Origin: Mytilus trossulus | Taxonomy: Eukaryota | Assembly (NCBI RefSeq): GCF_036588685.1 | Contig: NC_086374.1 | Location: forward strand, 38,006,001-38,070,000 | Length of the DNA stretch: 64,000 nt | Direction: 5' to 3' | Part shown: positions 15,636 to 36,139 of the stretch, one piece after another | How the letters are laid out: every line of letters begins with the position of its first letter | Position numbering within the stretch: position 1 is the first letter of the stretch | Notes under the pieces: model-generated | Databases searched by the model: none | What the model was told of the DNA's origin: nothing | Seen by the model: the letters and a program-made list of their open reading frames with translations, nothing else | Position numbers and translations under genes: made by a program

Positions 15636-16496
15636 CAAAACTACATGCTCTGTTAAATAATAAAAATATTGATATTGTCAATTGAGTATAATACCGCATA
15701 ATGAACTGAAAAGTAAAGAAGAATGCAACTGATAAGACGAAATGCTTACAGGTTTATTGTGTGAGTCATTAATTTGTAAACCTTTTAGTTTTGATAATGA
15801 ACCTTTGTACCATGAGAAATCAAATAAACTAATGTTTTCTTCATTCGAAATTGCATCTGAGCCATTTAATATTAATTCAATGACCATTGGTGAGTCCGTG
15901 TAACACTTATCAATTCAAAGTTTTAAAAAGTTTTGAAATTTTAGATTTTTGGAATTTTGATCAAAGTTTTAAAATATCAAAATTTCAAATTGTGTTAAAG
16001 TTTTGAAATTTTGAAATTTTAACCAAATTGTTAAAATATAAAAATTCTAAATATCGTTTATAAATTTGATATTTTAGAAACTTGATCAAACTTTTAAAAT
16101 ACTAAACCTAACGAGCAATTTTGATTATTTCACTTTTTGAAAGTTTTATTTTTTAAATGTTTGCTTAAAATATCAAAAATATAAAGGGGCGACAAGAGGG
16201 GTACCTGTAATCACTGATGTAGACACGGCTCTGATAAGGACTATTCTTAGATAAAATAAATATCATGACATATATCAAATCATTCTTCATAACAAAATAA
16301 ATAATGAAAAGAAGAAGTCGGTTTTTTTATGAAACATATTAGACATCACATGGGATAACAGTATCCTGAAAATTTAAGGTTGTGCATCTATCAAAAAAAA
16401 AATATAATTAAACCTATTTAAACCGGAATCAACTACGCTGATTTAAATCTCTTATATAAGGTTTAGCGTTTGAGATAAATAATTCAAAGCCTTTTT

Positions 16497-18534: not shown

Positions 18535-19914
18535 AAAAACCGGCAACATTTATATTCTGGTATCCATCTATGATGAGTTTTTGTAGATACCTTGTAACAG
18601 TATCTTGGTTCCAATTTGCTGATATTGGATCTTAGTACCGTCTTTTAGAGCCGTACGTCTGGTTTTTAAATAGATTATCTTCTTTTAAGAAATATTAATT
18701 TTGTCATTCAATTTTTCACCGCTTACAAATGTCTGTTTTATTTCATACATAAAGTTTTAAGTATCAGTATGTTTTTAATTCATAATGTTTCGTTTCGTTC
18801 CGCTTTTATTTCGTTTCGCTTTTTACAGGTATCCCTCTTATTGCCCCTTTTCTATTTTGATATTTTAAGCAAACATTTAAAAAATCAAACTTTCAAAAAG
18901 TGAAATAATCAAAATTGCGCGTTAGGTTTAGTATTTTAAAAGTTTGATCAAATTTCTAAACTATCAAATTTATAAACGATATTTAAAATTTTGATATTTT
19001 AATAATTTGGAAAAAATTTCAAAATTTCAAAACTTTAACACAATTTGAAACTTTGATATTTTAAAACTTTGATCAAAATTCCAAAAATCTAAAATTTCAA
19101 AACTTTTTAAAACTTTGAATTGATAAGTGTTACACGGACCTTGGTGCCGTTAATTTTAGGCTTCCAAATGATATTATCAGTTCCTGTCTTATGTCCGAGT
19201 ATAATGGGCAAAATAATAAAAATTGAGCTAGTTTCTAAGTCACCACAGCGACAATTAGGAGAAGAAACTAAGTTTCTTGGAAACAAGTGACAGTTTAAAG
19301 AACTACGTTTCATTCTAAGTCGAGCGTGATGAGTTTGGCCTTTTGGACATCCAGCATAAAAGTATAAAGGGACGCGATCGTTCTGATTTCAAATTTGTTT
19401 TTTGAATACAGAGATAGATTCACAATTTCTAACACTTAACGGTAAATGATTCTAGAATTTGATGGATGACGGAAGATAATAATCAGAATAAAGTTTAGTA
19501 CGTCACAGTGATTTAACCTGTAATAGATTATTACTTTGTCTTGTTCTGTGGTCGTGTCGACCACTGACATAGCCAGGGAATAGCTCTTGCAAATAATTTG
19601 GGGTTTTATTATTTACAATTTTATAAAGCAATATTAATTTTTGGTTACTTCTTCGATCGGAAAGTTTCTCCCATTGGGTTTCTTTATATACCATCGACGT
19701 ACTTGTGAGCTTATTCACCACTGTAACAATACGGGCGGCGTCCAACTGGATGTTTTCAAGTTTATTCATTAAAGATTGATTTCCTGAATCCCAGATAACA
19801 TCAGCATATTCAATGATAGGTCTTCATTGTCACTCATACCTCATCTTCGTATATCTATATATCATATTGATTTAGATCACAGCGTTAAAAGAGATAAGTT
19901 CTACTACAAGTTTA

Positions 19915-21015
19915 ATGGCACTTTACCCAATCTTAACTTTACTTGCTTTCGGAAATGATATGAGAAAGGTTAACTTATAACTGCTACATACACTGATCAA
20001 GAAACTTTGTATAATGCCATAATAAATGGACAAAATAAGAATATGCGACCACCAACAAATCAATCTAAGCCGACAAATATCTCCAAAGACTTTAGTCTTC
20101 ATACATTGCAGGAAATTGACGTAGTTGACGGAACTATGAGTTTAACTAACTGGAATCTTTTTTATTACATGGGACGCTGTCATCATGACATGAGACTACT
20201 TCCTCATACGGGGGTATAAAACACATGGGTGTGTCTATAGATTCTGTCTGGAAACCACCACTTATTAACTCAAATACAGCACATGAACAGAAAATTTTCG
20301 GAATACCGGGACTCTCTTTTAAACGTGTTATACGACGGAATAGTGTACTGGAATGCTGACGAAAAGTTGAAGTTCTCGTGTAATAGAGACACAATATACT
20401 TCCCCTTTGAATAGCTTTGATTCACAATCATGTACATTCAGAGTAAAGCCATTTGGTCTGGCGAAATTTGAAACGGAATTTACCTCTTCAGGCTATGTGC
20501 TGATCAATGATTATGGCTCTAACAGCGAATGGGAACTGTTGAGTTCTGTCATCACAGTAGATAATACGGATGGTTCACACATGAACGTCACTTTAAAGTA
20601 TAAAAGACGACCTCTGTTTTTGACTGGTGAACTTAGTGCTACCTATCATGTTGCTCGCAGTTTTAAATATCTTTGTTTTTATTTTACCTCCGGGATCAGA
20701 GGATCGTTTCGGGTTTTCAATAACAATTTTACTTGCTGCATTCGTGCTTATGACGATTGCACAAGGTTTACTTCCTGCAACTGCTCTTCCAAGATTGACT
20801 GCTTTGCGTATAATGCTGATGGTTGATATATTAATGAGTGGAATAATTCTTATATCTGTCATCATGGGTTTGTGGTTTTACAATAGACCACAAGATTGAA
20901 AACACCAACAACCAGAGTGTATAGTTGTAATATGGACAAAGAGAACAAAATAATAAAATGATCACGCCTGAAGAAAAGGTAATATGGCTAGACGTTGCCT
21001 CGTTATGGGACAAAC
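19915..21015 (+). pseudogene. Intronless nAChR-like Cys-loop receptor pseudogene
   Basis: Fragments in shifting frames: ETLYNAIINGQNKNMRP, WKPPLINSN, Cys-loop CNRDTIYFPF/DSQSC split by a 10-nt insertion, NSEWELL, KRRPLF, M1-M3 (NLVLPIMLLAVLNIFVFILPPGSEDRFGFSITILL...LLPATALPRL), KVIWLDVASLWDK. Several stops and frameshifts (e.g. AACT duplication near 20145); truncated before M4. Confidence 0.88.
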
Positions 21016-22697
21016 TTTTAGTCCTTGTATATCTATGATGAGTGAAATGATAAAAAATAGAAAAACAAAAATACCGAGCTCCCAGGAAAAATTCAATACG
21101 GAAAGTGCTTAATCCAATGCCAAAATCAAAAGCTCAAACACATTGAACGAATGGATAACAACTGTCATATTCCATACTTGATACAGGCATTTTTAAATGA
21201 AGAAAATGGTGGATCGAACCTGGTTTTATAGCTGTGTTACATAATTGTTTATCGTTCATATTTTGTATATTTATTAGGCCATTAGTTTTCTCCTTTGGAC
21301 TGTTTTATATTCATCATTTTGGGGCCTTTGACAGTTGACTATGCAGATGAGCTTTGCTTATTTTTGAAGGCTGTACAATCACATATTGTTGTTAATGTAT
21401 GTGTCATTTGGTCTATTGTGAAGATTTGTTTCATTGGAAAGTATACCACATCTTCTATTTTTATATCATAGGTAAAAATGTCAGAAATAGAGGAACATCA
21501 GTCATCATTGTGTTATAATCAAATCAATAAGAAAACAAAACAATTATGCCAACAAAGAAAAACAAATAAACAGATAGAGAAAGAACATTAGCAAAAACGA
21601 AGGACAAGAAAACAAAAAATTAATATGCCACGGTCTCACACGAAAAAAATAAAATCTAATTCATTTTTCATTAAAATAAAACGAGGAGCATTTAAATATT
21701 GAAAATTTGATAGAACATTTTGTATTTAGAGTAGTTTCATTGTGTACACATATTATTACAACATTGGATATCTTCCACTTTGATATAACAATTGGGAGAC
21801 ATTCTATTTCTACGTCAATTGTATTATTATTGTCTACGTTCAATAGCTCTCGGTAAAATGAAACTAAAACAAGCCACGAAGAAATAATCTTTAAAAGATT
21901 CGTGCCATAGAATATGACTTTGGAAAAACAAAATTTCGAACTCCAAGGGAAATTCGAAACGGAAAGTCTTTTATAAAATGGTAAAATCGAAAACGTAAAC
22001 ACATTCAACGAATGGAAAACAACTGCCATATTCCTCGGTACAGGCATTTCCTTATTGATGTCGAATATTTTGTTTATTCAGGCTCCTTTGAGTCCATGTC
22101 GTCTCTTTGTTCATCACAGGACAATTTCCTCTTTGACCATCATATCATATCGGATCCCCTTATCTTTAAATGGTGAACTATTAATCCATGAAGAATCGAA
22201 ATCTTCCGTTAGTACGTATTACACTTTTAAGAATCAAACGGTTCAAGTAAACAAGACTAATGCTAAATATTTATTTTTCATAAAGTTACAATTTCTCCTT
22301 TGTTAAATATTTATAAAAGACAAAGAGAAAGAACCATTCCCATTATCCTAAGTTTGAACATGAAATCGTTCTAAAGATGGAGTCAATATATATGTATATA
22401 TATGATCATAAATGGACGGTGATAAAAAGTAAAAGTCGATTATCATTATTAATCTTTTGAAGAGTGAATTTAAATGTTACAACGACTAAATAAACATTTG
22501 GGTACTAATTGTTGCGAGAGGATAAACATAATGTATGGTAAAGCAAACATATCATCACTCAGTGACAATGAGATGTAACATTATTTACGAAAAACCGCCA
22601 CATATAAATGCAATTGCATTTTACCCTTTAGCTTAATGAGACACAGACCACACACAGTTGTTTAGTTTCATTGGTGTGAAACGTGCCATCACTGCAA

Positions 22698-23960
22698 ATG
22701 GATTTGTGTCAACTTTTAAAGCCACAAATGCCACAGTTGCACAGATTGTTATTAGTATTACTATTAGCCTTTCAAATGATCAACGCATCTTATTTTACTG
22801 AAATCGATAGATTGCATAAAGATTTGATGACTGGATATAATAAAGATATATTGCCACAATGGAACAAATCACAACCAGTAGATGTCTCGATTGTATTTCA
22901 TTTACTTAATCTGAATGGAATAGACAGTGTAAAGGGAGTTATTGCCATTGCAGGATATTTTATTTTTCAATGGATTGACGTAAATATGCAATGGACACCA
23001 GCCAATTACACTTCTATAGAAAACATAGTCATACCCCTTGAAAAAGTATGGAAACCGCCTGTTATAAATGCTAATTCTGTCATGGAATATAAATTCTTTG
23101 GAGCCGCAGGTACCTTTGTTCGTGTTAACCATACAGGTCTGGTTACATGGACTCCAGGTATTAATTTGGAATTTTCTTGTAATATGGACACAACGAAATA
23201 CCCTTTCGATACACAGATGTGTGAACTGGAAGTTATGATATGGGGGTACAGTTCAGAAGAACTTACTTTTACGACGAGCAGAACTGATGTTGACATCAGC
23301 TTTTATCAATTTAACAATGAATGGGAATTAATGTATACTTCGGCTGTTGCGATCAATACAAGTAATTTAAGTCCGCTTGTGCAAATTGAAACCCACTTTG
23401 AACGTCGTTCTTTGTATTATGTAATGAATCTTATTTTCCCTGTAATGCTTTTAGCATTACTAAATTTATTTGTATTTCTTTTGCCACAGGATTCAGGTGA
23501 AAGGGTTGGATTTTCAGTTACACTATTGTTAGCAAATGTTATGTTTCTAACGATTGCAGAGAATATGCTCCCAGCTACAGCAATACCGAGAATGTCCGCC
23601 ATTTGCATTGCACTGTTACTGAATCTATGTTATAGCGGACTTATAGTCATTACTGTTATCATTAGCGGCAACATCTATCATAAGCCGGACGAGCAGGTTA
23701 TCTCTAACTGGATAGTGAAATTTGTACAAATAGGTAAATTATTTAGAAGTAACCATAAGCAAGTATCATCAGAAATGATAATTCCTCACGTTGAAAAGGA
23801 CTTCGATGGAGAAAAATACGAAAACAGGAAAGAAAATAACCTACACAAGGTCAACTGGCAGCAAGTTGCAAGAATGGTGGACCGTATTGCCCTTATCTCT
23901 TATATTACACTTTTCATATTTGGTTGTAGCGGCGTTTTTATAGATTGTTCCCGAAGGTAA
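22698..23960 (+). CDS. Intronless divergent non-alpha nicotinic acetylcholine receptor-like subunit (copy A), ~420 aa
   Basis: Single ORF, first ATG at 22698 (alternative at 22728). Signal peptide, WKPP, Cys-loop CNMDTTKYPFDTQMC, NNEWEL, ERR pre-M1, M1-M3, DSGERV cation-type motif before M2, NWQQVARMVDR before M4. No vicinal Cys pair in loop C. Confidence 0.95.
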   Translation: MDLCQLLKPQMPQLHRLLLVLLLAFQMINASYFTEIDRLHKDLMTGYNKDILPQWNKSQPVDVSIVFHLLNLNGIDSVKGVIAIAGYFIFQWIDVNMQWTPANYTSIENIVIPLEKVWKPPVINANSVMEYKFFGAAGTFVRVNHTGLVTWTPGINLEFSCNMDTTKYPFDTQMCELEVMIWGYSSEELTFTTSRTDVDISFYQFNNEWELMYTSAVAINTSNLSPLVQIETHFERRSLYYVMNLIFPVMLLALLNLFVFLLPQDSGERVGFSVTLLLANVMFLTIAENMLPATAIPRMSAICIALLLNLCYSGLIVITVIISGNIYHKPDEQVISNWIVKFVQIGKLFRSNHKQVSSEMIIPHVEKDFDGEKYENRKENNLHKVNWQQVARMVDRIALISYITLFIFGCSGVFIDCSRR

Positions 23961-24537
23961 AATTTTGTGTGTTGCTGTAAGGGGAACGTTATATAAATTC
24001 GAGAAATACTGTTAAATAAATCCGACATAATTTATAGTCTAAACTGTTAGAAAAGTCAAACAAATCATTGTCCAAACTGTAAGAAATAAAAGTGGCGAAA
24101 AAATAGACATTACTAGAGGTGCAGCGTGCAAAAACAAACCGAGGAAGCTATATAACAATAACCATGTCAAATGGTACATCCAGTGCAAAAGGAAGAAGAA
24201 AAAAGAATAACCAGACACCTACTTCATATCATTGACTGACGATATTCCGAACTAGTCAAAACAAAAACAAAACAAAAATAAACACAAAATTGTATTTTTT
24301 AACAAAATCTCAGTGTTGTATGCAAATTTTTGTTGAACAAAACTCACTTTTGTCCGTACAAAATTGAATTCAAGTACAAAACCAGAACAGTCCCATTCGG
24401 CGCCCGTACTAGCAGTCACTCGTTTATTGTTCAACCAAACAACGATAATTGTAACTTGCATAGGACATAATTATTAACTTATGTCATCTGATTTTAGTAT
24501 AGCACTGATTTTTCATAAAAAAAAAAAAGTGGTTGCA

Positions 24538-25153
24538 TTTTTATGCCCCACCTACGATAGTAGAGAGGCTTTATGTTTTCTGGTCTGTGCGTCCGCTTGT
24601 TCGTCCTTCCGTCCGTCTGTACTTCTGTCCGTTCGTCCCACTTCAGGTTAAAGTTTTTGGCCAAGGTAGTTATTGCTGAAGTTGAAGTCCAATCAACTTG
24701 AAACTTAGTATACATGTCCCTGTGATATGCTTTTTATGCCCCATTTATGGGCATTATGTTTTCTGGTCTGTGCGTCCTTCCATCCGTCCGTCTGTTCGTC
24801 TGTTCGTCCGTCCGTCCTTTTGTCCCACTTCAGGTTAAAGTTTTTGGTCGAGGTAGTTTTTAATAAAGTTGAGGTCCTATCTATTTGAAACTTAGTAAAC
24901 ATGTTGCCTATGATATGATCTTTCTAATTTGAATGCCAAGTGAGAGATTGTATCCATTTTCATGGTCCACTGAACATAGAAAATGATAGTGCAGATGGGG
25001 TATCCTTGTACTTGGGACACATTCTTGTTCTTATTTAGATGCCAGATTAGAGATTTTACCCCAATTTTTACACATAAAACACATTTAAGTACATTAAACA
25101 CAGAAAATGATAGTGCGAGTGGGGCATCCGTGTACTATGAACACATTCTCGTT
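24538..25153 (-). mobile_element. HINE/Helentron-like non-autonomous repeat, tandem partial copies
   Basis: Same family as 37160-37454 and 53021-53300 in the opposite orientation; (CCGT)n-type microsatellite, terminal TTATGCCC..GGGCAT palindrome, T-rich insertion site; absent from duplicate copy B. Confidence 0.65.
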
Positions 25154-26439
25154 ATACATTTTTCATTTTTAGTCTTTTCCTTAAAAAACACGAATCAGTC
25201 GGCTTTCACACGAAATTAACGGATTCATCTTATGTAGTGTAGATATAAATAATTTAAATAAAATATACGCTATAGAGGTAATTATTTTGTGTATTCAGTT
25301 AGATATTCAATAAATTGAATACACAAATGCTTTACCTGAAAACCAGTCTAATTATCAACTAACGTGATATATTAATGTTGATCAATTAAGACTGCATTTG
25401 AGTCGAGTTGAGTTCAATCAAAACTTGCACCTTTGAGTGTTATTGTTTGAAAATATCTTGACAGCTGTCTATCATACTAGTATTGAATCTCATTTTTCTA
25501 ATGAAAGAATGAAAATTTCAAAAAAATGTTGGAATTAACTTTGATATCAAATTTTATTCAATGGTTTACAGAAATATACATGATACTGACAAAACACTTT
25601 CATTATTCTTATCAACTGACTATTATATTAATAAAATTATCATTTTCCACATTAATAAATTAATGGCAATTTAGAATATATTTTGATTTTCTAAAAGGAA
25701 CTATATATATGCTATTGTGTATATATAGAAATAAAGCAGTTTTTCGCCTGACATTTTCTTAATTTAAGAACAAATAAATGAAACATTAGTATACCGCTGT
25801 TCGCAATATATTGCATGTTTGTGTTCCCAAGTATCTGATACTTCACTCAGACTCAGAAATAACATATCAAAAGTTGGCAGTTAATGATTGTAAAAATTGT
25901 GTTTCCAGTCATAGAAGCACACACTTATTTTCATTTTATGTCTTTTTCTAAGGATTTTGCACCATTCCGGTAAGAGGTGAAACCTGCGGAATCTCACGCG
26001 TTATCGTGAGAGGAATTCCATGTCTGTCATTCAAAATTCATGAATAGCAACATACTTGGTCGGTTGAGAACAAATCATTACTACCTACATATAGATGATT
26101 TAAGTTACTCAGTTGTGAACTTTTCGTTTCCTATCATGATTTCCTCGAATGGGGTAACCAATCACAAGGAAGCTATTTCACCAAGAGCTCCAAGTGGTGC
26201 GTTTGAATGCATTTGTGAAACAGTCAACTAAATCCCGATAGCGATCTTAACATTTTCAAAGAGATGCCTTCAACTTCACCACTTGTAACTCTTGGTTTAA
26301 TAGCTTCCTTGTAATTAACAATCTAATTCAAGAAAAAAATGATAGGCAAAATCCGGCCCGCAAAATCAATCCTTTAATTTGCAACCCATTTTAAAGGAAT
26401 TCATCATAGGCAAATCAATCAGTGACCTAGAACAAAAAC

Positions 26440-27352
26440 AACAAAACCTTAGAATCCTAATGATAAACTGTCAAAGCGTAAGAAATAAACGATCAAGCTA
26501 TGTGAGTGAAAGCAGTATAAAGATAAACATATAATACTTGCAGGAGATTTCAACCTCGTCATATTGACTGTGATAACAACACAATCAAATCAAGAAAAGC
26601 ACAAGTAAAACATCACCAATAGCGTCTTAAACTCATTGAAGAATTTGGCATGGAACAACTAAATGAATTATTTTTTTTACAAACCATTCAAGCCTTGAAA
26701 AGTCATGTACCAAACTACCTGGAATAACAAATAACAAAGATCATTTTTCTTAAAACAGACTTAAAACCGCAATACAATAAACCAAAACCAAGAGAAATAT
26801 ACGTTTACAAGAAATCAAAATGGGAGGTGAGCAAATATGGCATTATAAAATTGGGCTCTGACATCACCAATAGTAACACCTCTGTTGAAATTAGGAAGAC
26901 CAACCTCAAAAATAATATTGTAACAACACTCAATCTTAATTTACCAAAGAATATAACAATTAAGAGACATAAAAAGTAAAATCTCAAAAATAATGAATTC
27001 CGAAGAAAATTCAAAGCAGAAAGTTCGTAATGAAATGGCAAAATCAAAATCTACATTGGTTATCAAAAAACGTGAATAAAAAAAGGAAAAAACACAAACT
27101 GTTCCAGAAAGCTAAACAGACAGAATTGTCCGAAGACTGAGGAAAATTTAAATATAAAAAATAAAAAAGCTAACTGGCAGTATGACAACAAAATACTAGA
27201 CGCAGCTTTGGAGGACGGTAATAGTAAAACTTGCTTGCGATACATAAAGTCAGAACGTACTGACAAGGTATAGGTGTTGCTGGAATTAACAAACATGGAT
27301 TTTTTTTACACTAGGATATCAAATTTAAGGCAGACTTACTTAATGAGTAATT
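26440..27352 (+). mobile_element. Degenerate LINE ORF2 fragment (APE endonuclease region), copy A
   Basis: LRILMINCQSVRNK and IILAGDFNL motifs; many frameshifts; paralogous to 36140-37652. Confidence 0.75.
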
Positions 27353-30300
27353 TATGAACGCTAGAATGAATTTATCAGTGGCGGATCCGGAAATTTTCCT
27401 TAGAGGAGGACCCTGGACTTCTAAAGAGGGGACCCGCTCTATTCATGCTTCAGTGATTCCATAAAACACCCACATTTTACGAAATGAGGAGGCGGGCGCG
27501 TTGATGCTCCTCTAAATCTAGTTAAGGCATGTATAATTTAATTGCACTTGAATACGAATTAGAAAAAATCCTATCGGATTTAGAATTTCAATAGCTGTTC
27601 GGAAGACTCATGGAAAGATTGAACAGAAGTACCTTTTTTTTTCACTGACGTTCGGAAAAGTTCCTGTTTTATGTCCTACCTTATGGGCATTATATTTTTC
27701 GATCATTCTGTCCCGCTTCAGGTTATTGTTTTTAGTGAATGTAGTTTTTGATGAAGTTGAAGTCAAACCAACTTGACTTAATACACATGTTCCCTATGAT
27801 TTTTAATTTCTAATTACAAATGTATAATAAATTTATTTGTAAGCGATATTTTCCTAAAGTATTCCATTCTTTCACATTATGGATTTAAAATGTACAATTT
27901 CGAAACTGGAAGGTCTTCTCCAATTAGAACTTTCATATACATCTTTCTTTTTGATATGGTGGCATATTTTTCACACACTAAAATACAAATGAAATCTCTA
28001 TTCAATATTACTTTTTCTTTTTATTGATCAGCACTTTTAGACCATGTCAGCGTGTATCGTTGGTTACTGTCATTTTGTTTTTCGTTCACCTTTGTAGTAC
28101 CTGAGTTGGGCCATTATGTAATATTTTGTTTTATGAATGCAACTCTTTTTAGCATTTAAAACAAAAATGTGTTCATATAATGGACTATAACATCCCCATC
28201 TTATGTTAAAGGAGGACTGAACCCTCCGATATACATGGTTTACTCCACCACACTATTTATTTACTTGTCTTAATCTAGGAGTATGTACTCATTAGACAAG
28301 TGGATTGTTTTGATTGCTGTCCGTCAACATAATTTCCTGTTTTCGCAAAGACGGTTTGGATGAAATAAGTCTCCCCTAAAGAATGGCTGTGCCAATTGAA
28401 ATTGTATTTCATAGTGTTTTAATTTGTGTTACTTCGTTTTTTGATTGAGGTAAGCCTTCCAATTGATATTTTATAGTTTGTCTTTCTATGTTGTGATGTC
28501 ATACTATTGTTTCAAGAAAGGCAGAAGGTTTGGTACCATTTAAACGTTAAATCCCGGTAGAATTGTTTGCACATGTCCTAAGTGAGGAATCTGGTGCATA
28601 AGTGTTTCTCGTTTCTATATAGATTAGACCGTTGGTTTTCCCGTCTGAATGGTTTTATACTAGTAATATTTGATCGCCAAGGCTCCGTGTTGAAGGCCGT
28701 ACATGGACCTTTAATGGTTCACTTTTACAAATTGTTACTTGGATGGAGAGTTTTCTCATTGGCATACATACCACATCTTCTCGTATCTAATTAATAGTAA
28801 TTTTAATATTAAGGTTGCTCTCTCAATTTTTATTCTATAAATATCTCACCTGACGTAGACGTAGAGAAGTACATTAAAGTGACTTGAAAAAACTACTTAC
28901 CAAAGACAAACAACGACTCCCAAATGTTAAATTGATATCTATACGCACATGTGTTATCTAAATGAAAATTAGTAACATAGCTTCATTAATGATGAAATGG
29001 TAAAGATTTGAAGACAATGACAGTGGAAGAAACAGTTCACACTGGATCCATATTTGAAATAACATTTTTCTATTCATTTCAAGTGCCGATGGAGAGAAAT
29101 AAGAAGAACCAACCAATGCAGAAATGCTTACTATAAACTGATGTAAGTTAAGTCTAGTTGAGCCGCTCTGTGTGGCTAAAAGGGGGAACATTCATCGGAC
29201 AGTGGTTGTTTTTGTCTATAAAAACACGCATTACAATTGCTACAAACAATAATCATAAAATATGTCACAGCCTCACACGAAAAAAAAAATCTAATTCATT
29301 TTCTTGCTCATTGAAGAAAAACGAGGAGTCATAACGGAAATATGACTGAACATTTTGTATTAAGAATAGTTTCATTGTATATGTTGTGTAAGAGAGAGCA
29401 ACCGTAATATTAAAATTATTATTAATTAGATTTTTTGTACAAGTTATTAGTGTTTTATGACCTGCTGAACAAAAATGGATGATGCAAGCACACAGTATTT
29501 TGCTTCGCATATTTCTCTCATATTTTCACAACTTCATGATACAGTCTAATACTGAGCATTGATACAAACACATTACAAGACAACATAAAGATTTTGTATG
29601 GATATGCATATGGTATAAGGAAAATAATTAAAAAAGAATTTAAACTATTCAGGTATCCTCATTTTTAGGTTGAACACAAGGAGAATAGCACTTAATGTTA
29701 GGTTTATGTATACTTTTTTTGAATTTAAATCATTACACTGGTACATTTTGTAAGATAAACATGTATCACTTATTGCAACTATATAGGTTTTTAAAACCTT
29801 ATAACTTGTACAAAAACCCTGTACAAATTATAATTTGTAAACATATTATAACAACATTGGATATCTTCCACTTTAATATAACAATTGGGAAACATTCTAT
29901 TTTTACGGCAGTTGTATTAGTTTATGTAATGCCTACGTTAAATAGCTCTCTGAAAAAGTAAGCTTAGCCAAGCCACGAAGAAATAGTCTTAAAAAAGAAT
30001 CGTGCATAACCAACACTCCGAACTCCAAGGACATTTGAAACGGAAAGTCTTTTATAAAATGTCAAATGCAAAAGCGTAAACACATTCACAAATAGAAAAC
30101 AACTGTCATTTTCGTCTCTCTCTCTCTCTATCTTTCAAGAATCAAACGGTTTAAGTAAACAAGACTAATGCTGAAATATTTATTTTTCAATAATGAAGTT
30201 ACAATTTCTCCTTTGTTAAATATTCAAAAAGACAAAGAGAAAGAAACATTCCCATTACCTTACGTTTGAACATGAATTCGTTCTAAAATGGAGTCAATAT

Positions 30301-30607
30301 ATATATGATCATAAATGGACGATGATAAAGTAAAAATCAATAATTATAATTAATCTTTTGAAGAGTGAATTAAAATGTTACAACATGGGTAACAATTCAA
30401 ATGAACATTTGGGTACTAATTGTTGCGAGAGGATAAACATCATTTATGATATAGCAAACATATCATCACTTAGTAACAATGAGATGTAACATCAATTACG
30501 AAAAGCCACCACATATAATAACAATAACAATTACCCTTCAGCTTAATGAGACACAGACCAAACACAGTTGTTTAGTTTAATTGGTGTGAAACGTGGCATT
30601 AGAACAA

Positions 30608-31870
30608 ATGGATTTGTGTCAACTTTTAAAGCCACAAATGCCACAGTTGCACATATTGTTATTAGTTTTACTATTAGCCTTTCAAATGATCAACGCATCT
30701 TATTTTACTGAAATCGAAAGATTGCATAAAGATTTGATGACTGGATATAATAAAGATATATTGCCACAATGGAACAAATCACAACCAGTAGATGTCTCAA
30801 TTGCATTTCATTTATTTAATCTGAATGGAATAGACAGTGTAAAGGGAGTTATTGCCATTGCAGGATATTTTATTCTCCAATGGATTGACGTAAATATGCA
30901 ATGGACACCAGCCAATTACACTTCTATAGAAACCATAGTCATACCACTTGAACAGGTATGGAAACCGCCTGTCATAAATGCTAATTCTGTATTAGAATTT
31001 AAATTCTTTGGAGCCACTGGAGCCTCTGTTCGTGTTACACATACAGGTCTGGTCACATGGGCTCCAGGTCATAATTTGGAATATACTTGTAATGTGGATA
31101 CATCGTACTACCCTTTCGATACACAGATGTGTGAAATGGAAGTTATGATGTGGGGGTACAGTTCAAAAGAACTAACTTTTACGACGAGCAGAACTGATGT
31201 TGACCTCAGCTTTTTTCAATTAAACAATGAATGGGAATTAATGTATACTTCAGCTGTTGCAATCAATAGTAGTACTTTAAGTCCGCGTGTGGAAATTGAA
31301 ACCCACTTTGAACGTCGTCCTTTATATTATGTAATGAATCTTATTTTCCCTGTAATGTTTTTAGCATTACTAAATTTATTTGTATTTCTTTTGCCACAGG
31401 ATTCAGGTGAAAGGGTTGGATTTTCAGTTACACTATTGTTAGCAAATGTTATGTTTTTAACGATTGCACAGAATATGCTCCCAGCTACAGCAATACCGAG
31501 AATGTCCGCCATTTGCATTGCACTGTTACTGAATCTATGTTATAGCGGACTTATAGTCATTACTGTTATCATTAGCCGCAACATCTATCATAAGCCGGAC
31601 GAGCAGGTTATCTCTAACTGGATAGTGAAATTTGTACAAATAGGTAAATTATTTAGAAGTAACCATAAGCAAGTATCATCAGAAATGATAATTCCTCACG
31701 TTGAAAAGGACTTCGATGGAGAAAAATACGAAAACAGGAAAGAAAATAACCTACACAAGGTCAACTGGCAGCAAGTTGCAAGAATGGTGGACCGTATTGC
31801 CCTTATCTCTTATATTACACTTTTCATATTTGGTTGTAGCGGCGTTGTAATAGATATTTCTCAAAGGTAA
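30608..31870 (+). CDS. Intronless divergent non-alpha nicotinic acetylcholine receptor-like subunit (copy B), ~420 aa
   Basis: Tandem paralog of 22698-23960 (offset 7910 nt, no indels); Cys-loop CNVDTSYYPFDTQMC; same transmembrane architecture. Confidence 0.95.
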   Translation: MDLCQLLKPQMPQLHILLLVLLLAFQMINASYFTEIERLHKDLMTGYNKDILPQWNKSQPVDVSIAFHLFNLNGIDSVKGVIAIAGYFILQWIDVNMQWTPANYTSIETIVIPLEQVWKPPVINANSVLEFKFFGATGASVRVTHTGLVTWAPGHNLEYTCNVDTSYYPFDTQMCEMEVMMWGYSSKELTFTTSRTDVDLSFFQLNNEWELMYTSAVAINSSTLSPRVEIETHFERRPLYYVMNLIFPVMFLALLNLFVFLLPQDSGERVGFSVTLLLANVMFLTIAQNMLPATAIPRMSAICIALLLNLCYSGLIVITVIISRNIYHKPDEQVISNWIVKFVQIGKLFRSNHKQVSSEMIIPHVEKDFDGEKYENRKENNLHKVNWQQVARMVDRIALISYITLFIFGCSGVVIDISQR

Positions 31871-33455
31871 AATGGTGTGTGTTGCTGAATGAACAATTTA
31901 TTAATTCGAGTAATGCTAAAAAACAAATCCGACATTATGCATAGTCTAACTTTTTAGAAAAGTCCAAGAAATCCAATATCGTTATCCAAACTGTAAGAAA
32001 AAAAGGGGAGAAAAATGAGACAACACTAAAGGTGCAGCGTACAAAAACAATAAATCAGGAAGATGTAACAAAAACCATGTCAAATTGTATATCCAGTGCA
32101 AAATGTAGAAGAAGAAAAATAAGCAGCCACCTTCTTTATATCATTGACTGACGATATCAATCATAGTCAATCAGATCATTAGGATTAGAATACAGCATAT
32201 ATAAGTAATTACAAACCAACTTTAATATGAAACCCATTACTGGATTCAATTGCAATCTGAGGTTGTAATTTGTAAGCAGAGCAAGCTTATATTGATGACA
32301 CAGGCTGCCTTAATTTGACAAAAATATTTCTAAAAGAGCCATATATATAACATGGTCGCCAAGCTGTTCGACGCCATTCATTTAAAAGTAAAATATGACC
32401 TTCGGAAATATTGCGATAAGGTACACCTACAGCTTGGGTTGATTTTGCTTTGTCCACCGGCCCACCATGGAAGTGGCAAAGACTTGCAAGTATTATCACT
32501 TGAAAAAAAGCAGATAAGCATTTGTAATCAATTTTTTTACAAAAAAGAGATCATAGCTAGAGTGGGCAGGTGGAAAAAGCAAAATCCACTCGGGCTGTTG
32601 TGTACATTGTACCAACGTTATCAATCGGATATTGATTCTTAAAATTTCTAAAAAAAAAATCTGCTGTAAAATCTTCAATTACAATCTTGAAAATTTAATA
32701 CTTATAGTAATATTAAAACTTATATTTTTTCTACGCTTATCACTTCCATTCACCACACTCAATTTTCTTATTCGTCCCATTAAGTGTAGTATTTTCTGTA
32801 AAGTGTATTTGTTGATACAAATGTTTTGTTTTAGATCATAAAAATACCATACTGTGTGGAAAAGATTACAAAAACAATATCACTGAGGTTGATATCAACC
32901 AAATGCTTGTCTCTTTGCTCGAAAACATGTTTGTTAGAATTGGTTTTTTCTGTCTTCTTATCTTTTATGTTTGCTAATATGCTTTGTCTATATGCCTTTT
33001 TGTGCTTTTTTGTTACATATTTGTTTGTTTTTATAGTTATTCAGATTAAAACACAATGTTGACAGCTGTACCCCTATTTTTTTTTTTACATTTTTACCTA
33101 TTACTTTTGTTGTCATTGTCAATATAATGTATTTTGATGTGACTGTCATATAAGTGAGAGGTTAAGATAGCTTTAAACCCAGGTTAAATATTTCGTTGTC
33201 AACAAAAGAAAATGCTTGTACCAAGTCAGGAATATGACAGTTGACATTTATTCGATTGATGTTTTCGAGCTTTTGATTTTGTCATTTGATTAAGGAATTT
33301 CCTTTTTTAATTTTCCTCGGAGTTCAGTATCTTTATGATTTAACTTTTTGATATGTCAACTGAACAGACAGTTGGTATTCCCATGGGTACTTATTGTTTT
33401 TAATAGAAAAACTTCTCAAAGTCGAAAAGGGAAAAAATCTCGAAAAGTTGTTTAA

Positions 33456-34557
33456 GGACCGGTAAGGGCCGATTTTGGCCTCAAATTTCAGGTTCATCTA
33501 ACGAAAGATTTTGGACAATTTTTAAACACTTAAGTATCTATTTCAATTGATTCAGTTAGTTTATGTGACAGAATTTAACTGATTAAGTTTTTAAAACTCC
33601 TCCGATTAAGTTTTTAAAACCCCTCCTATCAATATGAAAACAACCGTCACTTTTCATGTGTTTTTTGTCAAAAATGAAAGTGGTCGCATTTGTGTTCCTT
33701 ACTCAACCTTTATATACATGTTATGTATTATCATCAAATGCAACTTACATTTCAATATTATGAATGAACACAAATGCGGCCACTTTTATTTAAGACGGAA
33801 ACCGTCTAAAATTTAACTAAAATGCTAAATTAATGATGTTAGTACCCGATATATGTGCATTGTTTTGTCAAAAACAGCCCACTATTTTGCAAAACTGCTA
33901 TATTTTGGGGCCAAAATAGGGTCTTACTGAACCTACTCCTTTCAATTTCCGGAAAGTTTGATGAAGTCCTAGCTGTCACTTGTTTATTGTTGGCTCGCGG
34001 GTACAAACAAATCAGCAAAAAAATTAACATTTGTTTTTTTTTATTACAAATATTATTTATTACACTATTAGTTTTAACTTTATAACTTGTTACAAAAATC
34101 ACCAAGACAAATCGATTTGGGTTGGCCACAAATGACTTTAAAATTGTTTTTATAGTAACATTAAAAAAGCTCGAAATTATCTCCCTTTGGTGCAAAAATG
34201 TCATTTTTTGACGTTTAAATTGAAACATCTTTTTTAACTCATAGGTGACCAATATTTTTTATTATTGTTTTCAAACAAGCTATACATAAACTTAATAATT
34301 GTAAAACTTAAGCGGTTTCTGTAATTAAGTTCTTTTCTTATTTCGATATTACCAATATTTCTCTATTAGTTCAACAGAAAAAAGGACATTTACAGTAATG
34401 TATGCTTCTTTCGGAGGCAGATTGTGAGCTTACATGAACGATGACCGCATGTTTTTATTTCATATTTTATTAGGTATAAGATAGTGTTTAATCATAGAAA
34501 AAAATAGCAAAATTCTATATTAAAAACAAAAGTTGATTTAGAACCTCGGGCCCCTTT
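33456..34557. mobile_element. Two adjacent Kolobok-like MITEs (~33456-33942 and ~33991-34557)
   Basis: Imperfect inverted ends (ccggtaagggccgattttggcc / ggccaaaatagggtcttactgaacc; ggctcgcgggtacaa / ttagaacctcgggccc), TTAA at the outer flanks; absent from copy A. Confidence 0.55.
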
Positions 34558-34922
34558 AAATAGGACATAATATTATCTCATCTGATTATAACACTGATTT
34601 TATATGGTCGCATTTTTATACATATTTTATTTTAGTATTTCCTTAAAAAATCCCATATCTTAGGAATCAGTCAGCTTTCACAAGAAATTAACAGTATCAT
34701 CTTATGTAGTGTTGATCAAAATAAATAACAGTTACTCTATAGAGGTAAAGATTTTGTGTTTTGAGTTAGATATGTGATTAATTGAAAACACAAATAAAAT
34801 GCTTTACCCCAACTAGCATGATATATTAATGGTGATCAATTAAGACTGAATTTGTCCGAATTATCATTGATATGGTCATATTTATAAATTAACTGTTAAC
34901 AAAACTTCTTTTTTTTAAATAC

Positions 34923-35271
34923 TAATAACATTAACGGTACCAAATTTCCTGCACCAGATGCGCATTTCGACAAAACATGTCTTTTCAGTGATGCTCGTGG
35001 CCAAAATATTTGAAATCCAAAGCTTATATAAAGGTTGATGAGCTATACCCAAAGATTTCCAAAAAGAAGAGCAAAATCCGTGAAAGGAATCAGAGCTTTG
35101 CATGAGGGAGATACATTCCTTAATTTATAATAATTTCTAACATGTTGTAACAGAAAATTTTAATAACACAATAAAACCCTCGTAGATTCATGCCAGTAGC
35201 GAGGTACTGGCTACTGGGCTGGTCATACCCTCGGAACTAACAGTCCACCAGCAGAGGCATCAACCTAGTAA
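34923..35271 (-). mobile_element. ~350-bp retrozyme-like monomer with a hammerhead, inserted antisense into another hammerhead-bearing repeat (~34855-35382)
   Basis: Contains the minus-strand hammerhead at 34951-34997; the host repeat carries a plus-strand hammerhead at 35296-35342; the whole composite is missing at the paralogous site (~25400). Confidence 0.65.
34951..34997 (-). ncRNA. Minimal type I hammerhead ribozyme with a single core mutation
   Basis: Minus strand: GCATCA-CTGAAAA-GACA tgttt TGTC-GAAA-TGCGCA (palindrome)-TC-TGGTGC. All three stems pair; the core has A where CUGANGA has G. Confidence 0.75.
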
Positions 35272-35295
35272 GGCTTTTCTACTTTTTTTTGGATT

Positions 35296-35342
35296 CGAGC
35301 ATCATTAATGAGTCATTTGTAGACAAAACGCGCGTCTGGCGT
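35296..35342 (+). ncRNA. Degenerate hammerhead ribozyme, same family as 18488-18534
   Basis: gcatca-TTAATGA-GTC atttgta GAC-AAAA-CGCGCG-TC-tggcgt; both core boxes mutated; shares the downstream ctggtatc..tatgatgagttt tail with the 18.5-kb copy. Confidence 0.6.
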
Positions 35343-36139
35343 AAATACAAAATTTAATCCTGGTATCTATGATGAGTTTATTGAATGAAGTTGAATCCAA
35401 TCAAAATTTGCAACTTTGAGTGTAATTGTTTGATACTGACAAAACACTTTCACTATTCCTATCAACTGACTAGATTTGATCAAAATTATATTTTCCACAT
35501 TAATACATAAATGGCAATTTAGAATAAAGGAACAATATGCAAGTGTTTATCTAAAAATAAAGAAGTTTTTGGTATGACTATTTCTTAATTTAAGAACAAA
35601 TAAATATTAGTATACCACTGTTCGCAAAATTCTGCATGTTTGTGTTTCCAAGTACCTGGTACTTCAATCAGACTCAGATATAACATATAAAAAATGTCAG
35701 TTAATGATTGAAACGGTGATTCCAGTTTCTGCAAGACATAGAAGCACACAATTCTTTTTCAAACTATGTCTTTTATTTAGGAATATGCACCATACCGGTA
35801 AGGGTCGAAACGAGCGGAAGCTCATGCGTTATTGTGAGAGGAATATCATGTCTGTCATTCAAAATGCATCAATGCAACATACTTGGTCGGTTGAGAACAA
35901 AACTTAACTAGATAGAAATGATTTCAGTTACCCAGTTGTGAACTTTTCATCTCTTAGTTGATACGATATTTCAGAAGTGAATTTCCCATCATGATTTCCT
36001 TGAATAGGGTTGCCAATTAAAAGGAAGCTATCTAATCAAGAGCTCCAAGTGTTGAAGTTGGATGCATTTTTGGAACAGTCAACCAAATCCTGATGGCGAT
36101 CTTGAAATTTCAAAGGAATGCCTTCAACTTCCCCTTAAA

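What the first reader, a model, noticed from the sequence alone, without database searches (positions are those of the whole stretch)
19915..31870. Cluster of intronless nAChR-like receptors lacking most of the ACh-binding signature: candidate bivalve chemosensory ion channels
Seen: two intact single-exon genes and one pseudogene in tandem, inserted between conserved multi-exon genes. Both intact proteins keep the Cys-loop and a cation-type GER motif before M2. They lack the loop C YxCC..Y motif (loop C is short and carries an N-glycosylation sequon, INTS or INSS), lack the loop A Tyr (WKPPVINANS), and have Tyr at the apparent loop D Trp position; only the loop B Trp (WGYS) remains. Known: bivalves have large intronless nAChR expansions, and cephalopod chemotactile receptors are tandem, nAChR-derived, ACh-insensitive sensory channels. 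Inference: these may be an independent, uncharacterised family gated by environmental chemicals and undergoing birth-and-death evolution.
Basis: partly seen in the sequence, partly recalled or inferred. Interest (0 to 1): 0.8.

Follow-up and report, generated by a model that had tools for sequence, protein, structure and literature searches.

The report
Mussel intronless nAChR-like gene pair
Two neighbouring single-exon genes and one dead relative in a mussel genome encode nicotinic-receptor-like ion-channel subunits that lack the usual acetylcholine-binding residues, but this is the normal state of a hundred-strong, already described bivalve gene family, so the cluster is ordinary and its sensory role remains untested.

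Summary
Two intact 425-codon ORFs (22683-23960, 30593-31870; 91% identical) and a frameshifted paralog (about 19974-21082) are Cys-loop receptor genes with a Cys-loop, a GER pre-M2 motif and loop B Trp, but no loop C Cys-Cys, no loop A Tyr, and Tyr at the loop D Trp position.

The window is from a Mytilus genome holding at least 99 similar, mostly uninterrupted ORFs in tandem arrays. Among 86 paralogs of at least 340 aa, 0 have the loop C Cys-Cys, 1 has loop A Tyr and 4 have loop D Trp. The signature loss is therefore family-wide, not special to this cluster.

This is the bivalve intronless nAChR expansion of Jiao et al. 2019. A 2026 preprint already notes divergent molluscan clades with altered ligand residues and suggests chemosensory roles.

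A and B form a narrow Mytilus-only twig. They appear transcribed at low level and unspliced, and are under purifying selection (dN/dS about 0.3-0.6). Gene conversion has partly homogenised them, including a 269-nt identical tract.

No tissue data, no tree with cephalopod chemotactile receptors and no ligand data could be obtained. A chemosensory role is untested. Another first-stage note (s1-826928) covers the same stretch.

The parts
22683..23960 (+). Gene A: uninterrupted ORF for a non-alpha, cation-type Cys-loop (nAChR-like) subunit. Likely ATG at 22728 (410 aa). Signal peptide, ligand-binding domain, M1-M3, short intracellular loop, M4.
   Evidence: model pLDDT 88.4 with the canonical topology; TM-score 0.77-0.80 to nAChR chains
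30593..31870 (+). Gene B: tandem paralog of A, 91% identical in protein, no indels within the ORF.
19974..21082 (+). Pseudogene: old divergent paralog of the same 12-member clade, with at least 4 frame changes and 2 in-frame stops. Loop B Trp replaced by Phe. M1-M3 still readable at 20624-20896.
   Evidence: no contig of runs X1-X3 or X16 lies on 20200-20799
22224..24245 (+). Duplicated gene block of copy A (ORF plus about 460 nt upstream and about 285 nt downstream), 90.5% identical to 30132-32157.
   Evidence: upstream flank 406 identical of 474 aligned columns, downstream 231 of 294
30132..32157 (+). Duplicated gene block of copy B.
23668..23936 (+). 269-nt tract identical between A and B (intracellular loop to M4): a recent gene-conversion tract.
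   Evidence: 0 of 10000 permutations reach this length. dS 0.030 for codons 244-425 against 0.123 in the ligand-binding domain
22767..24214 (+). Stretch covered by exact or near-exact contigs of three small, transcriptome-sized runs: apparent unspliced transcript (ORF plus about 250 nt of 3' UTR). AATAAA at 24015, 24085 and 24277.
   Evidence: tables 2 and 8
21622..27352 (+). Extent of the older tandem duplication unit (copy A side). Seven colinear same-strand matches to 29259-37652, with flanks at 73-78% identity.

Best explanation
This is a small tandem cluster of the large bivalve expansion of intronless nicotinic-receptor-like genes. Genes A and B encode non-alpha subunits of pentameric, probably cation-selective, ligand-gated channels. 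Their own principal face cannot make the canonical acetylcholine site: it has no loop A Tyr, no loop C Tyr pair and no Cys-Cys.

The pair arose by tandem duplication of a segment of at least 5.7 kb. It has stayed under purifying selection and has been partly homogenised by gene conversion, most recently over the M1-M4 half. The third copy is a much older paralog that has decayed. Gene A appears to be transcribed at low level as an unspliced message.

Shown here: family membership, residue states, duplication and conversion history, selective constraint, and family-wide loss of the signature.

Inferred: that the proteins form channels; that they are gated by something other than ACh, or serve as complementary or structural partners; and cation selectivity.
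For: Pfam LBD and TM domains. Nearest solved chains are nAChR alpha6, alpha1 and alpha7 at 2e-45 to 1e-40. Confident model with the canonical fold. At least 99 scored matches of 324 candidates in the same genome, nearly all uninterrupted and in tandem arrays. One clade of all 86 paralogs plus oyster sequences, SH-aLRT 98; A and B in a 4-row Mytilus-only clade (100) inside a 12-row clade (99). Family-wide residue states: CC 0 of 86, loop A Tyr 1 of 86, loop D Trp 4 of 86, loop B Trp 74 of 86, Cys-loop 86 of 86, -1' Glu 82 of 86. Only one other 50%-identity cluster above 42% identity among 1.84 billion representatives. No indel column in 1278 ORF positions against 44 of 768 in the flanks (p 9e-20). 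A against X16: 16 non-synonymous and 14 synonymous differences over N 682 and S 185 (p 0.002). Mosaic divergence with a 269-nt identical tract. Contigs of X1-X3 confined to 22767-24214 among low-copy bins. Published description of the expansion: PMC6896357.
Against: The RNA nature of runs X1-X3 is the tool's guess, not on record. A against B alone gives dN/dS 0.58, only marginally below 1 (p 0.053). The set of 86 paralogs is the set most like gene A and excludes multi-exon canonical subunits, so 'family-wide' means this intronless clade and not all nAChR genes of the genome. 11 of the 30 X16 differences equal gene B's base, so that comparison may mix orthologous and paralogous or converted sequence. 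No functional data of any kind. The tree used the quick search with SH-aLRT only.
Confidence: 0.85

Rival explanations
1. One reading: A and B form ACh-insensitive channels in sensory epithelia, gated by environmental chemicals. That would make them a bivalve analogue of cephalopod chemotactile receptors.
For: Loss of the ACh aromatic box and Cys-Cys, a short glycosylated loop C, and intronless tandem genes. These features are also reported for CRs (passages in PMC10338036 and PMC11526382). A/B differences are concentrated in the ligand-binding domain: 30 of 40 differing codons lie at 38-243. The lineage is narrow and fast-evolving. The preprint PMC13174522 raises the same possibility for divergent molluscan clades.
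Against: The same residue losses occur in essentially all 86 paralogs, so they do not single out a sensory subset. dN/dS is the same (about 0.58) in the binding domain and the channel half, and the mosaic is explained by lower dS in the 3' half. There is no special sequence affinity to CRT1: 116 bits against 158 for alpha6, and CRT1 is absent from the best 60 of the family profile search (though that profile included vertebrate rows). No tissue information. Apparent expression is low (contig depths 2-6). Jiao 2019 reports the highest expression of such genes in gill, and responses to stress and infection.
Confidence: 0.15
2. A and B are complementary or structural (beta-like) subunits that assemble with alpha-type subunits into otherwise conventional ACh-gated channels.
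For: They are non-alpha by definition, having no Cys-Cys. An aromatic residue (Tyr) sits at the loop D position of the complementary face. The genome encodes a canonical alpha-type exon with GSWTYDG and a vicinal Cys-Cys (L101) and closer canonical relatives at 43-56% identity to vertebrate alpha6. The gating scaffold is conserved: Cys-loop FPFD, pre-M1 Arg, M2.
Against: About a hundred such non-alpha genes is far more than the partner role needs. Loop D Trp, conserved in the vertebrate alpha3/alpha6 and 5-HT3A references and, from recall, in the known complementary subunits, is kept in only 4 of 86. A and B are only 25-26% identical to the vertebrate references.
Confidence: 0.3
3. A and B are functionless retrocopies on their way to decay, like the neighbouring pseudogene.
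For: A pseudogene lies next door. dN/dS is fairly high for the pair (0.58). Apparent expression is low. Jiao 2019 reports that more intron-poor genes have little or no expression.
Against: Both 425-codon frames are open, with no indel, although the flanks carry 44 indel columns in 768. An 88% identical full-length protein exists in M. galloprovincialis and an 83% one in another assembly. Non-synonymous differences are under-represented against X16 (p 0.002). All structural invariants are kept.
Confidence: 0.05

Closest known systems
Bivalve/lophotrochozoan intronless nAChR expansion (Jiao et al. 2019, BMC Genomics, PMC6896357)
   Same: Intronless coding region, tandem arrays, lineage-specific duplication, pseudogenes, and most members without the alpha signature or the principal ACh sites. 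The Mytilus genome here has at least 99 such ORFs, and A and B nest inside them.
   Different: Nothing of kind. A and B are a Mytilus-restricted twig: the nearest other cluster is at most 42% identical among representatives, and the nearest paralog in this genome is 47%. This Mytilus genome was not among the species analysed in the parts of that paper I read.
Cephalopod chemotactile receptors (CRT1, PDB 8eis and 9e6b; van Giesen 2020, Allard 2023, known to me through passages in PMC11526382 and PMC10338036)
   Same: nAChR-derived, intronless, tandemly expanded, lacking the ACh-binding signature, and pentameric cation-channel architecture.
   Different: No special sequence affinity: 115.7 bits against 158.1 for human alpha6. 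No evidence of sensory expression or of hydrophobic-ligand gating. Clade relationship not tested. CRs are described as a predominantly cephalopod clade, with a separate 'CR-like' clade that includes bivalves (PMC13174522, section 3.4.4). Whether A and B belong to that clade could not be determined.
Alpo4, orphan nAChR-like receptor of the annelid Alvinella pompejana (eLife 2023, PMC10338036, passages read)
   Same: A lophotrochozoan nAChR-like subunit without the loop C Cys-Cys. No response to ACh or serotonin, and the ligand is unknown. Cited there as an example of the expanded, functionally unassigned repertoire.
   Different: Alpo4 keeps the aromatic residues of loops A, B, C and D (F103, W159, Y199, Y205, W65). 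A and B keep only loop B Trp, plus a Tyr at the loop D position.
Vertebrate non-alpha nAChR subunits (beta2, beta4, delta; PDB 5kxi_B, 8zrn_B, 9dmg_D)
   Same: No loop C Cys-Cys, a Cys-loop, a -1' Glu, and the same fold.
   Different: From recall, those subunits keep loop D Trp and the WxPD motif of loop A and have a long intracellular loop. A and B have Tyr and WKPP, and only about 60 residues between M3 and M4.

Membership tests
[quoted passage not shown] | Extracellular ligand-binding domain followed by a four-helix transmembrane domain | tested here: met
   Pfam PF02931 (4e-41) and PF02932 (3e-15). The model has a beta-sandwich plus helices 228-251, 258-278, 291-317 and 377-408. TM-score 0.77-0.80 to nAChR chains.
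[quoted passage not shown] | Cys-loop: two cysteines 13 residues apart, with FPFD | tested here: met
   C-NMDTTKYPFDTQM-C in A. Both cysteines are present in 86 of 86 paralogs.
nAChR alpha subunit | Vicinal Cys-Cys at the tip of loop C (YxCC) | tested here: not met
   Loop C reads AINTSNLSP in A and AINSSTLSP in B.
ACh-binding nAChR subunit (canonical aromatic box) | Loop A Tyr, loop B Trp, two loop C Tyr, loop D Trp | tested here: not met
   Only loop B Trp is present. Loop A Tyr is Ala, the loop C tyrosines are absent, and loop D Trp is Tyr.
Cation-selective pLGIC | Glu at -1' before M2 (GEK/GER type) and no PAR motif | tested here: met
   SGERVGFSVTLLL in A and B. Glu is present in 82 of 86 paralogs. 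Selectivity itself cannot be tested with these tools.
Bivalve intronless nAChR expansion (Jiao 2019) | Coding region without introns | tested here: met
   The uninterrupted ORF runs from signal peptide to M4. There are no joints within 22767-24214 in the contigs of X1-X3. A 5' UTR intron is not excluded.
Bivalve intronless nAChR expansion (Jiao 2019) | Tandem array and placement within the bivalve-specific clade | tested here: met
   Three copies lie within 12 kb. The clade of 98 rows (86 Mytilus paralogs plus 12 database proteins, oyster ones among them) excludes the vertebrate, amphioxus and nemertean references, SH-aLRT 98.
Cephalopod chemotactile receptors | Membership of the CR clade in a phylogeny | not tested
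No CR sequence could be brought into an alignment. By score there is no special affinity.
Cephalopod chemotactile receptors | Expression in peripheral sensory epithelium | not testable with these tools
   Run metadata are coded and carry no tissue. Only presence in three runs of one study could be shown.
Cephalopod chemotactile receptors | Insensitive to ACh; gated by poorly soluble environmental molecules | not testable with these tools
   This needs electrophysiology.

The most novel reading that the evidence does not exclude
A and B, perhaps together with their 12-member clade on the same chromosome, form ACh-insensitive cation channels in exposed epithelia of mussels or their settling larvae. 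These channels would be gated by waterborne or surface-bound chemicals. That would be an independent, bivalve recruitment of the nAChR scaffold for chemosensation, parallel to cephalopod chemotactile receptors.
Probability: 0.12. Interest if true: 0.75.

Novelty: new member of a known kind. Interest (0 to 1): 0.25.

Why it matters
The cluster adds no new kind of gene. It is one small example of a described expansion, and the idea that such divergent receptors bind other ligands is already in print as a suggestion.

What matters more is the general point made measurable here. In one Mytilus genome, essentially the whole intronless clade (86 ORFs examined) has given up the canonical ACh site while keeping the gating scaffold and the cation motif. 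A large orphan channel repertoire therefore awaits deorphanisation.

The A/B pair is a convenient test case. It is short and intronless, has two close paralogs that differ mainly in the binding domain, and has an identified alpha-type candidate partner in the same genome.

Tried and rejected
No orthologous locus could be fetched, so no multi-species codon analysis and no test of whether the tandem arrangement or the pseudogene is shared between species.

Tree with cephalopod CRs: not possible. CR sequences appear only as PDB hits, which are not stored proteins, and were not among the proteins returned. I judged a further word-based search unlikely to reach them and did not spend it.

Diversifying selection on the binding domain was considered and rejected as the cause of the mosaic. 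dN/dS is 0.58 in codons 38-243 and 0.58 in codons 244-425. What differs is dS, 0.123 against 0.030.

The pseudogene as a recent dead copy of A or B was rejected: it is 26-54% identical, and no closer to A or B than to L003-L005.

The profile search of PDB is of limited value for ranking, because the alignment contained vertebrate alpha6, alpha3-like and 5-HT3A rows.

Pfam on ORFs 4301-4582(-), 5421-5675(-), 19506-19823(-), 42242-42520(-) and 49158-49544(-) gave nothing.

Literature searches for a functional bivalve chemosensory nAChR-like channel found none. This covers only the held open-access library.

Additional files S3/S4 and Table S1 of PMC6896357 (binding-site alignments, expression) and the supplementary clade tables of PMC13174522 could bear on which named clade A and B belong to.

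Papers seen:
- PMC6896357: abstract, outline, and Results parts 1-2 of 3.
- PMC13174522: abstract, outline, section 3.4 in full, plus passages.
- PMC11682238, PMC10338036 and PMC11526382: passages only.
- All others: search listings only.
- van Giesen 2020, Allard 2023 and Kang 2023 were not read; they are known here through citing passages and recall.
Full report
WHAT IS THERE. The window is G000:C2:38006001-38070000 of a 1.30 Gb genome in 541 contigs. The best named protein match is a Mytilus galloprovincialis hypothetical protein at 88% identity, and another is a Mytilus coruscus 'CHRNN' at 48%, so the source is a Mytilus mussel. Two open frames of 425 codons lie at 22683-23960 and 30593-31870 on the + strand. 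They are the longest in the 64 kb; the next is 253 codons. With a stop-codon probability of 0.077 per codon, the expected number of such frames by chance is about 2e-10. The tool's start is a GTG. In-frame ATGs lie at codons 6, 16 and 32, and the database holds a 410-aa protein identical to gene A, which fits a start at codon 16 (22728).

Both products match Pfam Neur_chan_LBD (4e-41 and 2e-40) and Neur_chan_memb. They are 384 of 421 residues identical.

A third copy is broken. Pieces matching residues 27-171, 100-142, 169-240 and 242-332 of the family lie in three different frames between 19974 and about 21082. There are two in-frame stops in the first piece and at least four frame changes.

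THE RESIDUE CLAIMS.
- Loop A is WKPPVINAN where alpha6 has WKPDIVLYN.
- The loop D Trp position holds Tyr.
- The loop B Trp is kept.
- Loop C is short (9 residues against 14 in the measured span) and has no Cys-Cys and neither of the two tyrosines. It carries N-x-S/T sequons.
- The Cys-loop has the 13-residue spacing with YPFD.
- SGER precedes M2.

A 75-sequence alignment gave an AlphaFold2 model with mean pLDDT 88.4 and pTM 0.77. It shows an N-terminal helix, a beta-sandwich, M1-M3, a short partly disordered intracellular loop (low confidence at 353-369) and M4. Foldseek puts it on muscle, alpha4beta2 and alpha7 nAChR chains with TM-scores of 0.77-0.80.

IS THE SIGNATURE LOSS SPECIAL? No. A six-frame search of the same genome with gene A gave 99 scored matches out of 324 first-look candidates. 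Nearly all are uninterrupted frames of about 350-470 codons, grouped in tandem arrays on contigs C2, C3, C7, C9, C10, C11 and C12. I fetched all 99 and took the longest open frame of each. Of these, 86 of 99 are at least 340 aa; the 13 shorter ones were dropped as broken or cut. Among the 86:
- 0 have the loop C Cys-Cys.
- 1 has the loop A Tyr.
- 4 have the loop D Trp.
- 74 keep the loop B Trp.
- 86 have both Cys-loop cysteines.
- 82 have the -1' Glu.
- All have a loop C span of 5-10 residues against 14 in alpha6.

The caveat is that this set is, by construction, the genes most like gene A, and multi-exon canonical subunits score lower. The genome does hold canonical types. A search with turtle alpha6 found a 545-codon open frame at 43% identity and a cluster on C4 at 46-56%. 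Of the two stretches I could still fetch, one (L101) has GSWTYDG and a vicinal Cys-Cys, and the other (L100) is a canonical non-alpha with WKPDIVLFN.

PLACE IN THE FAMILY. I built a tree of 106 rows: the 86 paralogs plus 20 database proteins. It used IQ-TREE quick search, LG+C20+F+G4, SH-aLRT support only, and a 5-HT3A outgroup.
- All Mytilus paralogs and the oyster sequences fall in one clade of 98 rows (support 98). The vertebrate alpha3/alpha6, amphioxus and nemertean references fall outside it.
- A and B sit with the M. galloprovincialis protein and one unnamed assembly protein in a 4-row clade (100).
- That clade is sister to a group holding the M. coruscus protein and L003. It lies inside a 12-row clade (99) whose genomic members (L003-L007) all lie on the same chromosome-sized contig C2.

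The exhaustive HMMER search of 1.84 billion cluster representatives found 1,139 proteins at E of 1e-30 or better. Only one (88%) was above 42% identity. A and B are thus a narrow, Mytilus-restricted twig of a very large family. The pseudogene is 26-54% identical to A, B and L003-L006 alike. It is an old member of the same neighbourhood of the tree, not a recent dead duplicate.

HISTORY OF THE PAIR. Seven colinear, same-strand matches link 21622-27352 to 29259-37652. The flanking segments are 73-78% identical and the gene block (22224-24245 against 30132-32157) is 90.5% identical. Inside the block the divergence is a mosaic:
- The immediate flanks have 10-25 differences per 100 nt.
- The middle of the ligand-binding domain has 6-16.
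- The stretches 22709-23008 and 23409-23908 have 0-3.
- There is a 269-nt identical tract at 23668-23936, a length reached by 0 of 10,000 permutations.

Nei-Gojobori estimates give dS 0.123 and dN 0.072 for codons 38-243, and dS 0.030 and dN 0.018 for codons 244-425. dN/dS is therefore 0.58 in both. The fourfold drop is in synonymous change (Fisher p 0.006-0.027, depending on rounding). This points to gene conversion of the channel half and not to selective diversification of the binding domain. It also answers the separate first-stage note on this stretch (s1-826928).

CONSTRAINT.
- The ORFs contain no indel column in 1278 positions, against 44 of 768 in the adjoining flanks (p 9e-20).
- A against B gives 42 non-synonymous and 19 synonymous differences over 972 and 258 sites (p 0.053).
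- Contigs of a large run from a related organism (X16, about 96% identical) differ from gene A at 30 listed places in about 878 covered nt: 16 non-synonymous and 14 synonymous, over N 682 and S 185 (ratio about 0.3, p 0.002).
- Eleven of those 30 equal gene B's base, so this comparison may include converted or paralogous sequence.

Taken together, the genes are under purifying selection that is weaker than is usual for synaptic receptors. That last comparison is from general knowledge and was not measured here.

EXPRESSION. The run search listed no holder on record as RNA. Three runs of one study and one organism (X1-X3, 57-74 million letters of contigs, guessed RNA) hold 42-59% of gene A's words. 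I laid them on 20200-26199.
- Their contigs, with 0-4 mismatches (the four of X1 with 0-1), lie only between 22767 and 24214, plus the high-copy repeats at 21000-21400 and 24400-25200.
- Of 16 low-copy flank bins, X1 covers 0, X2 covers 2 and X3 covers 1. One of X2's two is the ORF start itself. The other X2 bin and X3's bin coincide with repeat depth in X16.
- The pseudogene bins are bare.
- X16 covers 26 of 30 bins, including the unique flanks.
- No joint falls inside the gene.

This is the pattern of a low-abundance, unspliced transcript ending about 250 nt past the stop codon. The RNA nature of the runs is a guess, contigs cannot give strand or level, and tissue is unknown.

WHAT IS KNOWN. 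Jiao et al. 2019 (PMC6896357; Results parts 1-2 read) report the following:
- There are 99-217 nAChR genes in five bivalves, mostly intronless or intron-poor and in tandem arrays. [quoted passage not shown]
- In C. gigas only 33 of 132 are alpha-type, and only 13 keep the principal ACh sites.
- Expression is highest in gill, with responses to stress and infection.

Perez-Moreno and Katz 2026 (preprint PMC13174522; section 3.4 and passages read) sort 3,586 molluscan sequences into 15 clades. They describe a cephalopod CR clade and a 'CR-like' clade that extends to bivalves, and note substitutions at ACh-coordinating positions in several divergent clades. They write that an ionotropic chemosensory contribution of divergent nAChR clades 'merits systematic functional exploration'.

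The Alpo4 paper (PMC10338036, passages) shows a lophotrochozoan nAChR-like orphan that responds to neither ACh nor serotonin, and it draws the same parallel to CRs. A 2024 bivalve sensory transcriptome paper states that CRs are only known from cephalopods (PMC11682238, passage). My searches found no functional test of any bivalve member.

VERDICT. The sequence observation is correct and well above chance. The genes are ordinary members of a described expansion. For these genes it is untested. By sequence score A is closer to nAChR alpha subunits (158, 156 and 144 bits) than to octopus CRT1 (116 bits).

My best account is a pair of constrained, weakly expressed, non-alpha cation-channel subunits with an unknown ligand, shaped by tandem duplication, gene conversion and pseudogenisation. 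Whether they act as orphan non-ACh channels, as partners of alpha-type subunits, or as chemosensors cannot be decided with these tools.

Noticed in passing
window 15894-16210 and 18823-19139: Inverted repeat pair, 94.6% identical over 317 nt, enclosing about 2.6 kb just upstream of the pseudogene. These may be the ends of a transposable element.
   Followed up: no
window 21000-21400 and 24400-25200: Very high-copy repeats. Summed contig depth reaches about 5.8e5 in run X16, and they are also present in the RNA-like runs X1-X3. There is an internal tandem copy, 24567-24735 against 24750-24923, at 80%.
   Followed up: partly
window 44168-44479, 47079-47870, 50341-50733 (minus strand): Kelch-repeat exons (Pfam) and an ORF in which a peptide of about 20 aa is repeated several times. 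This is the neighbouring gene that another first-stage note (s1-827075) calls LCMT2, with a tandem repeat.
   Followed up: partly
window 60305-60547 (+): An exon-sized open frame matching the MINDY-3/4 deubiquitinase conserved domain (2.5e-6, 27.1 bits against a cut-off of 27).
   Followed up: no
window 19506-19823 (-): A 106-aa open frame between the inverted repeat and the pseudogene. It has no Pfam hit. By eye it looks like the tail of a retroelement protein, which is recall and was not tested.
   Followed up: partly
L015/L016 (G000:C9:63.23 and 56.07 Mb); L092/L094 (G000:C6:48.64 and 58.91 Mb): Pairs of nAChR-like loci megabases apart give identical or nearly identical scores. L015 and L016 share the same internal TGA, and L092 and L094 have branch lengths of 0 and 0.015. 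These are either very recent large duplications or assembly redundancy.
   Followed up: no
L100 (G000:C9:52202477-52203946) and L101 (G000:C4:77566533-77567297): Canonical-type nAChR sequences in the same genome. L100 is a non-alpha with WKPDIVLFN in a 545-codon uninterrupted frame. L101 is an alpha-type exon with GSWTYDG and a vicinal Cys-Cys, in a cluster of at least 4 matches on C4.
   Followed up: partly
window 24098: One base is left out relative to the window in the contigs of X1 and X2 but not X3. This is a 3' UTR length polymorphism among samples of the same organism.
   Followed up: no
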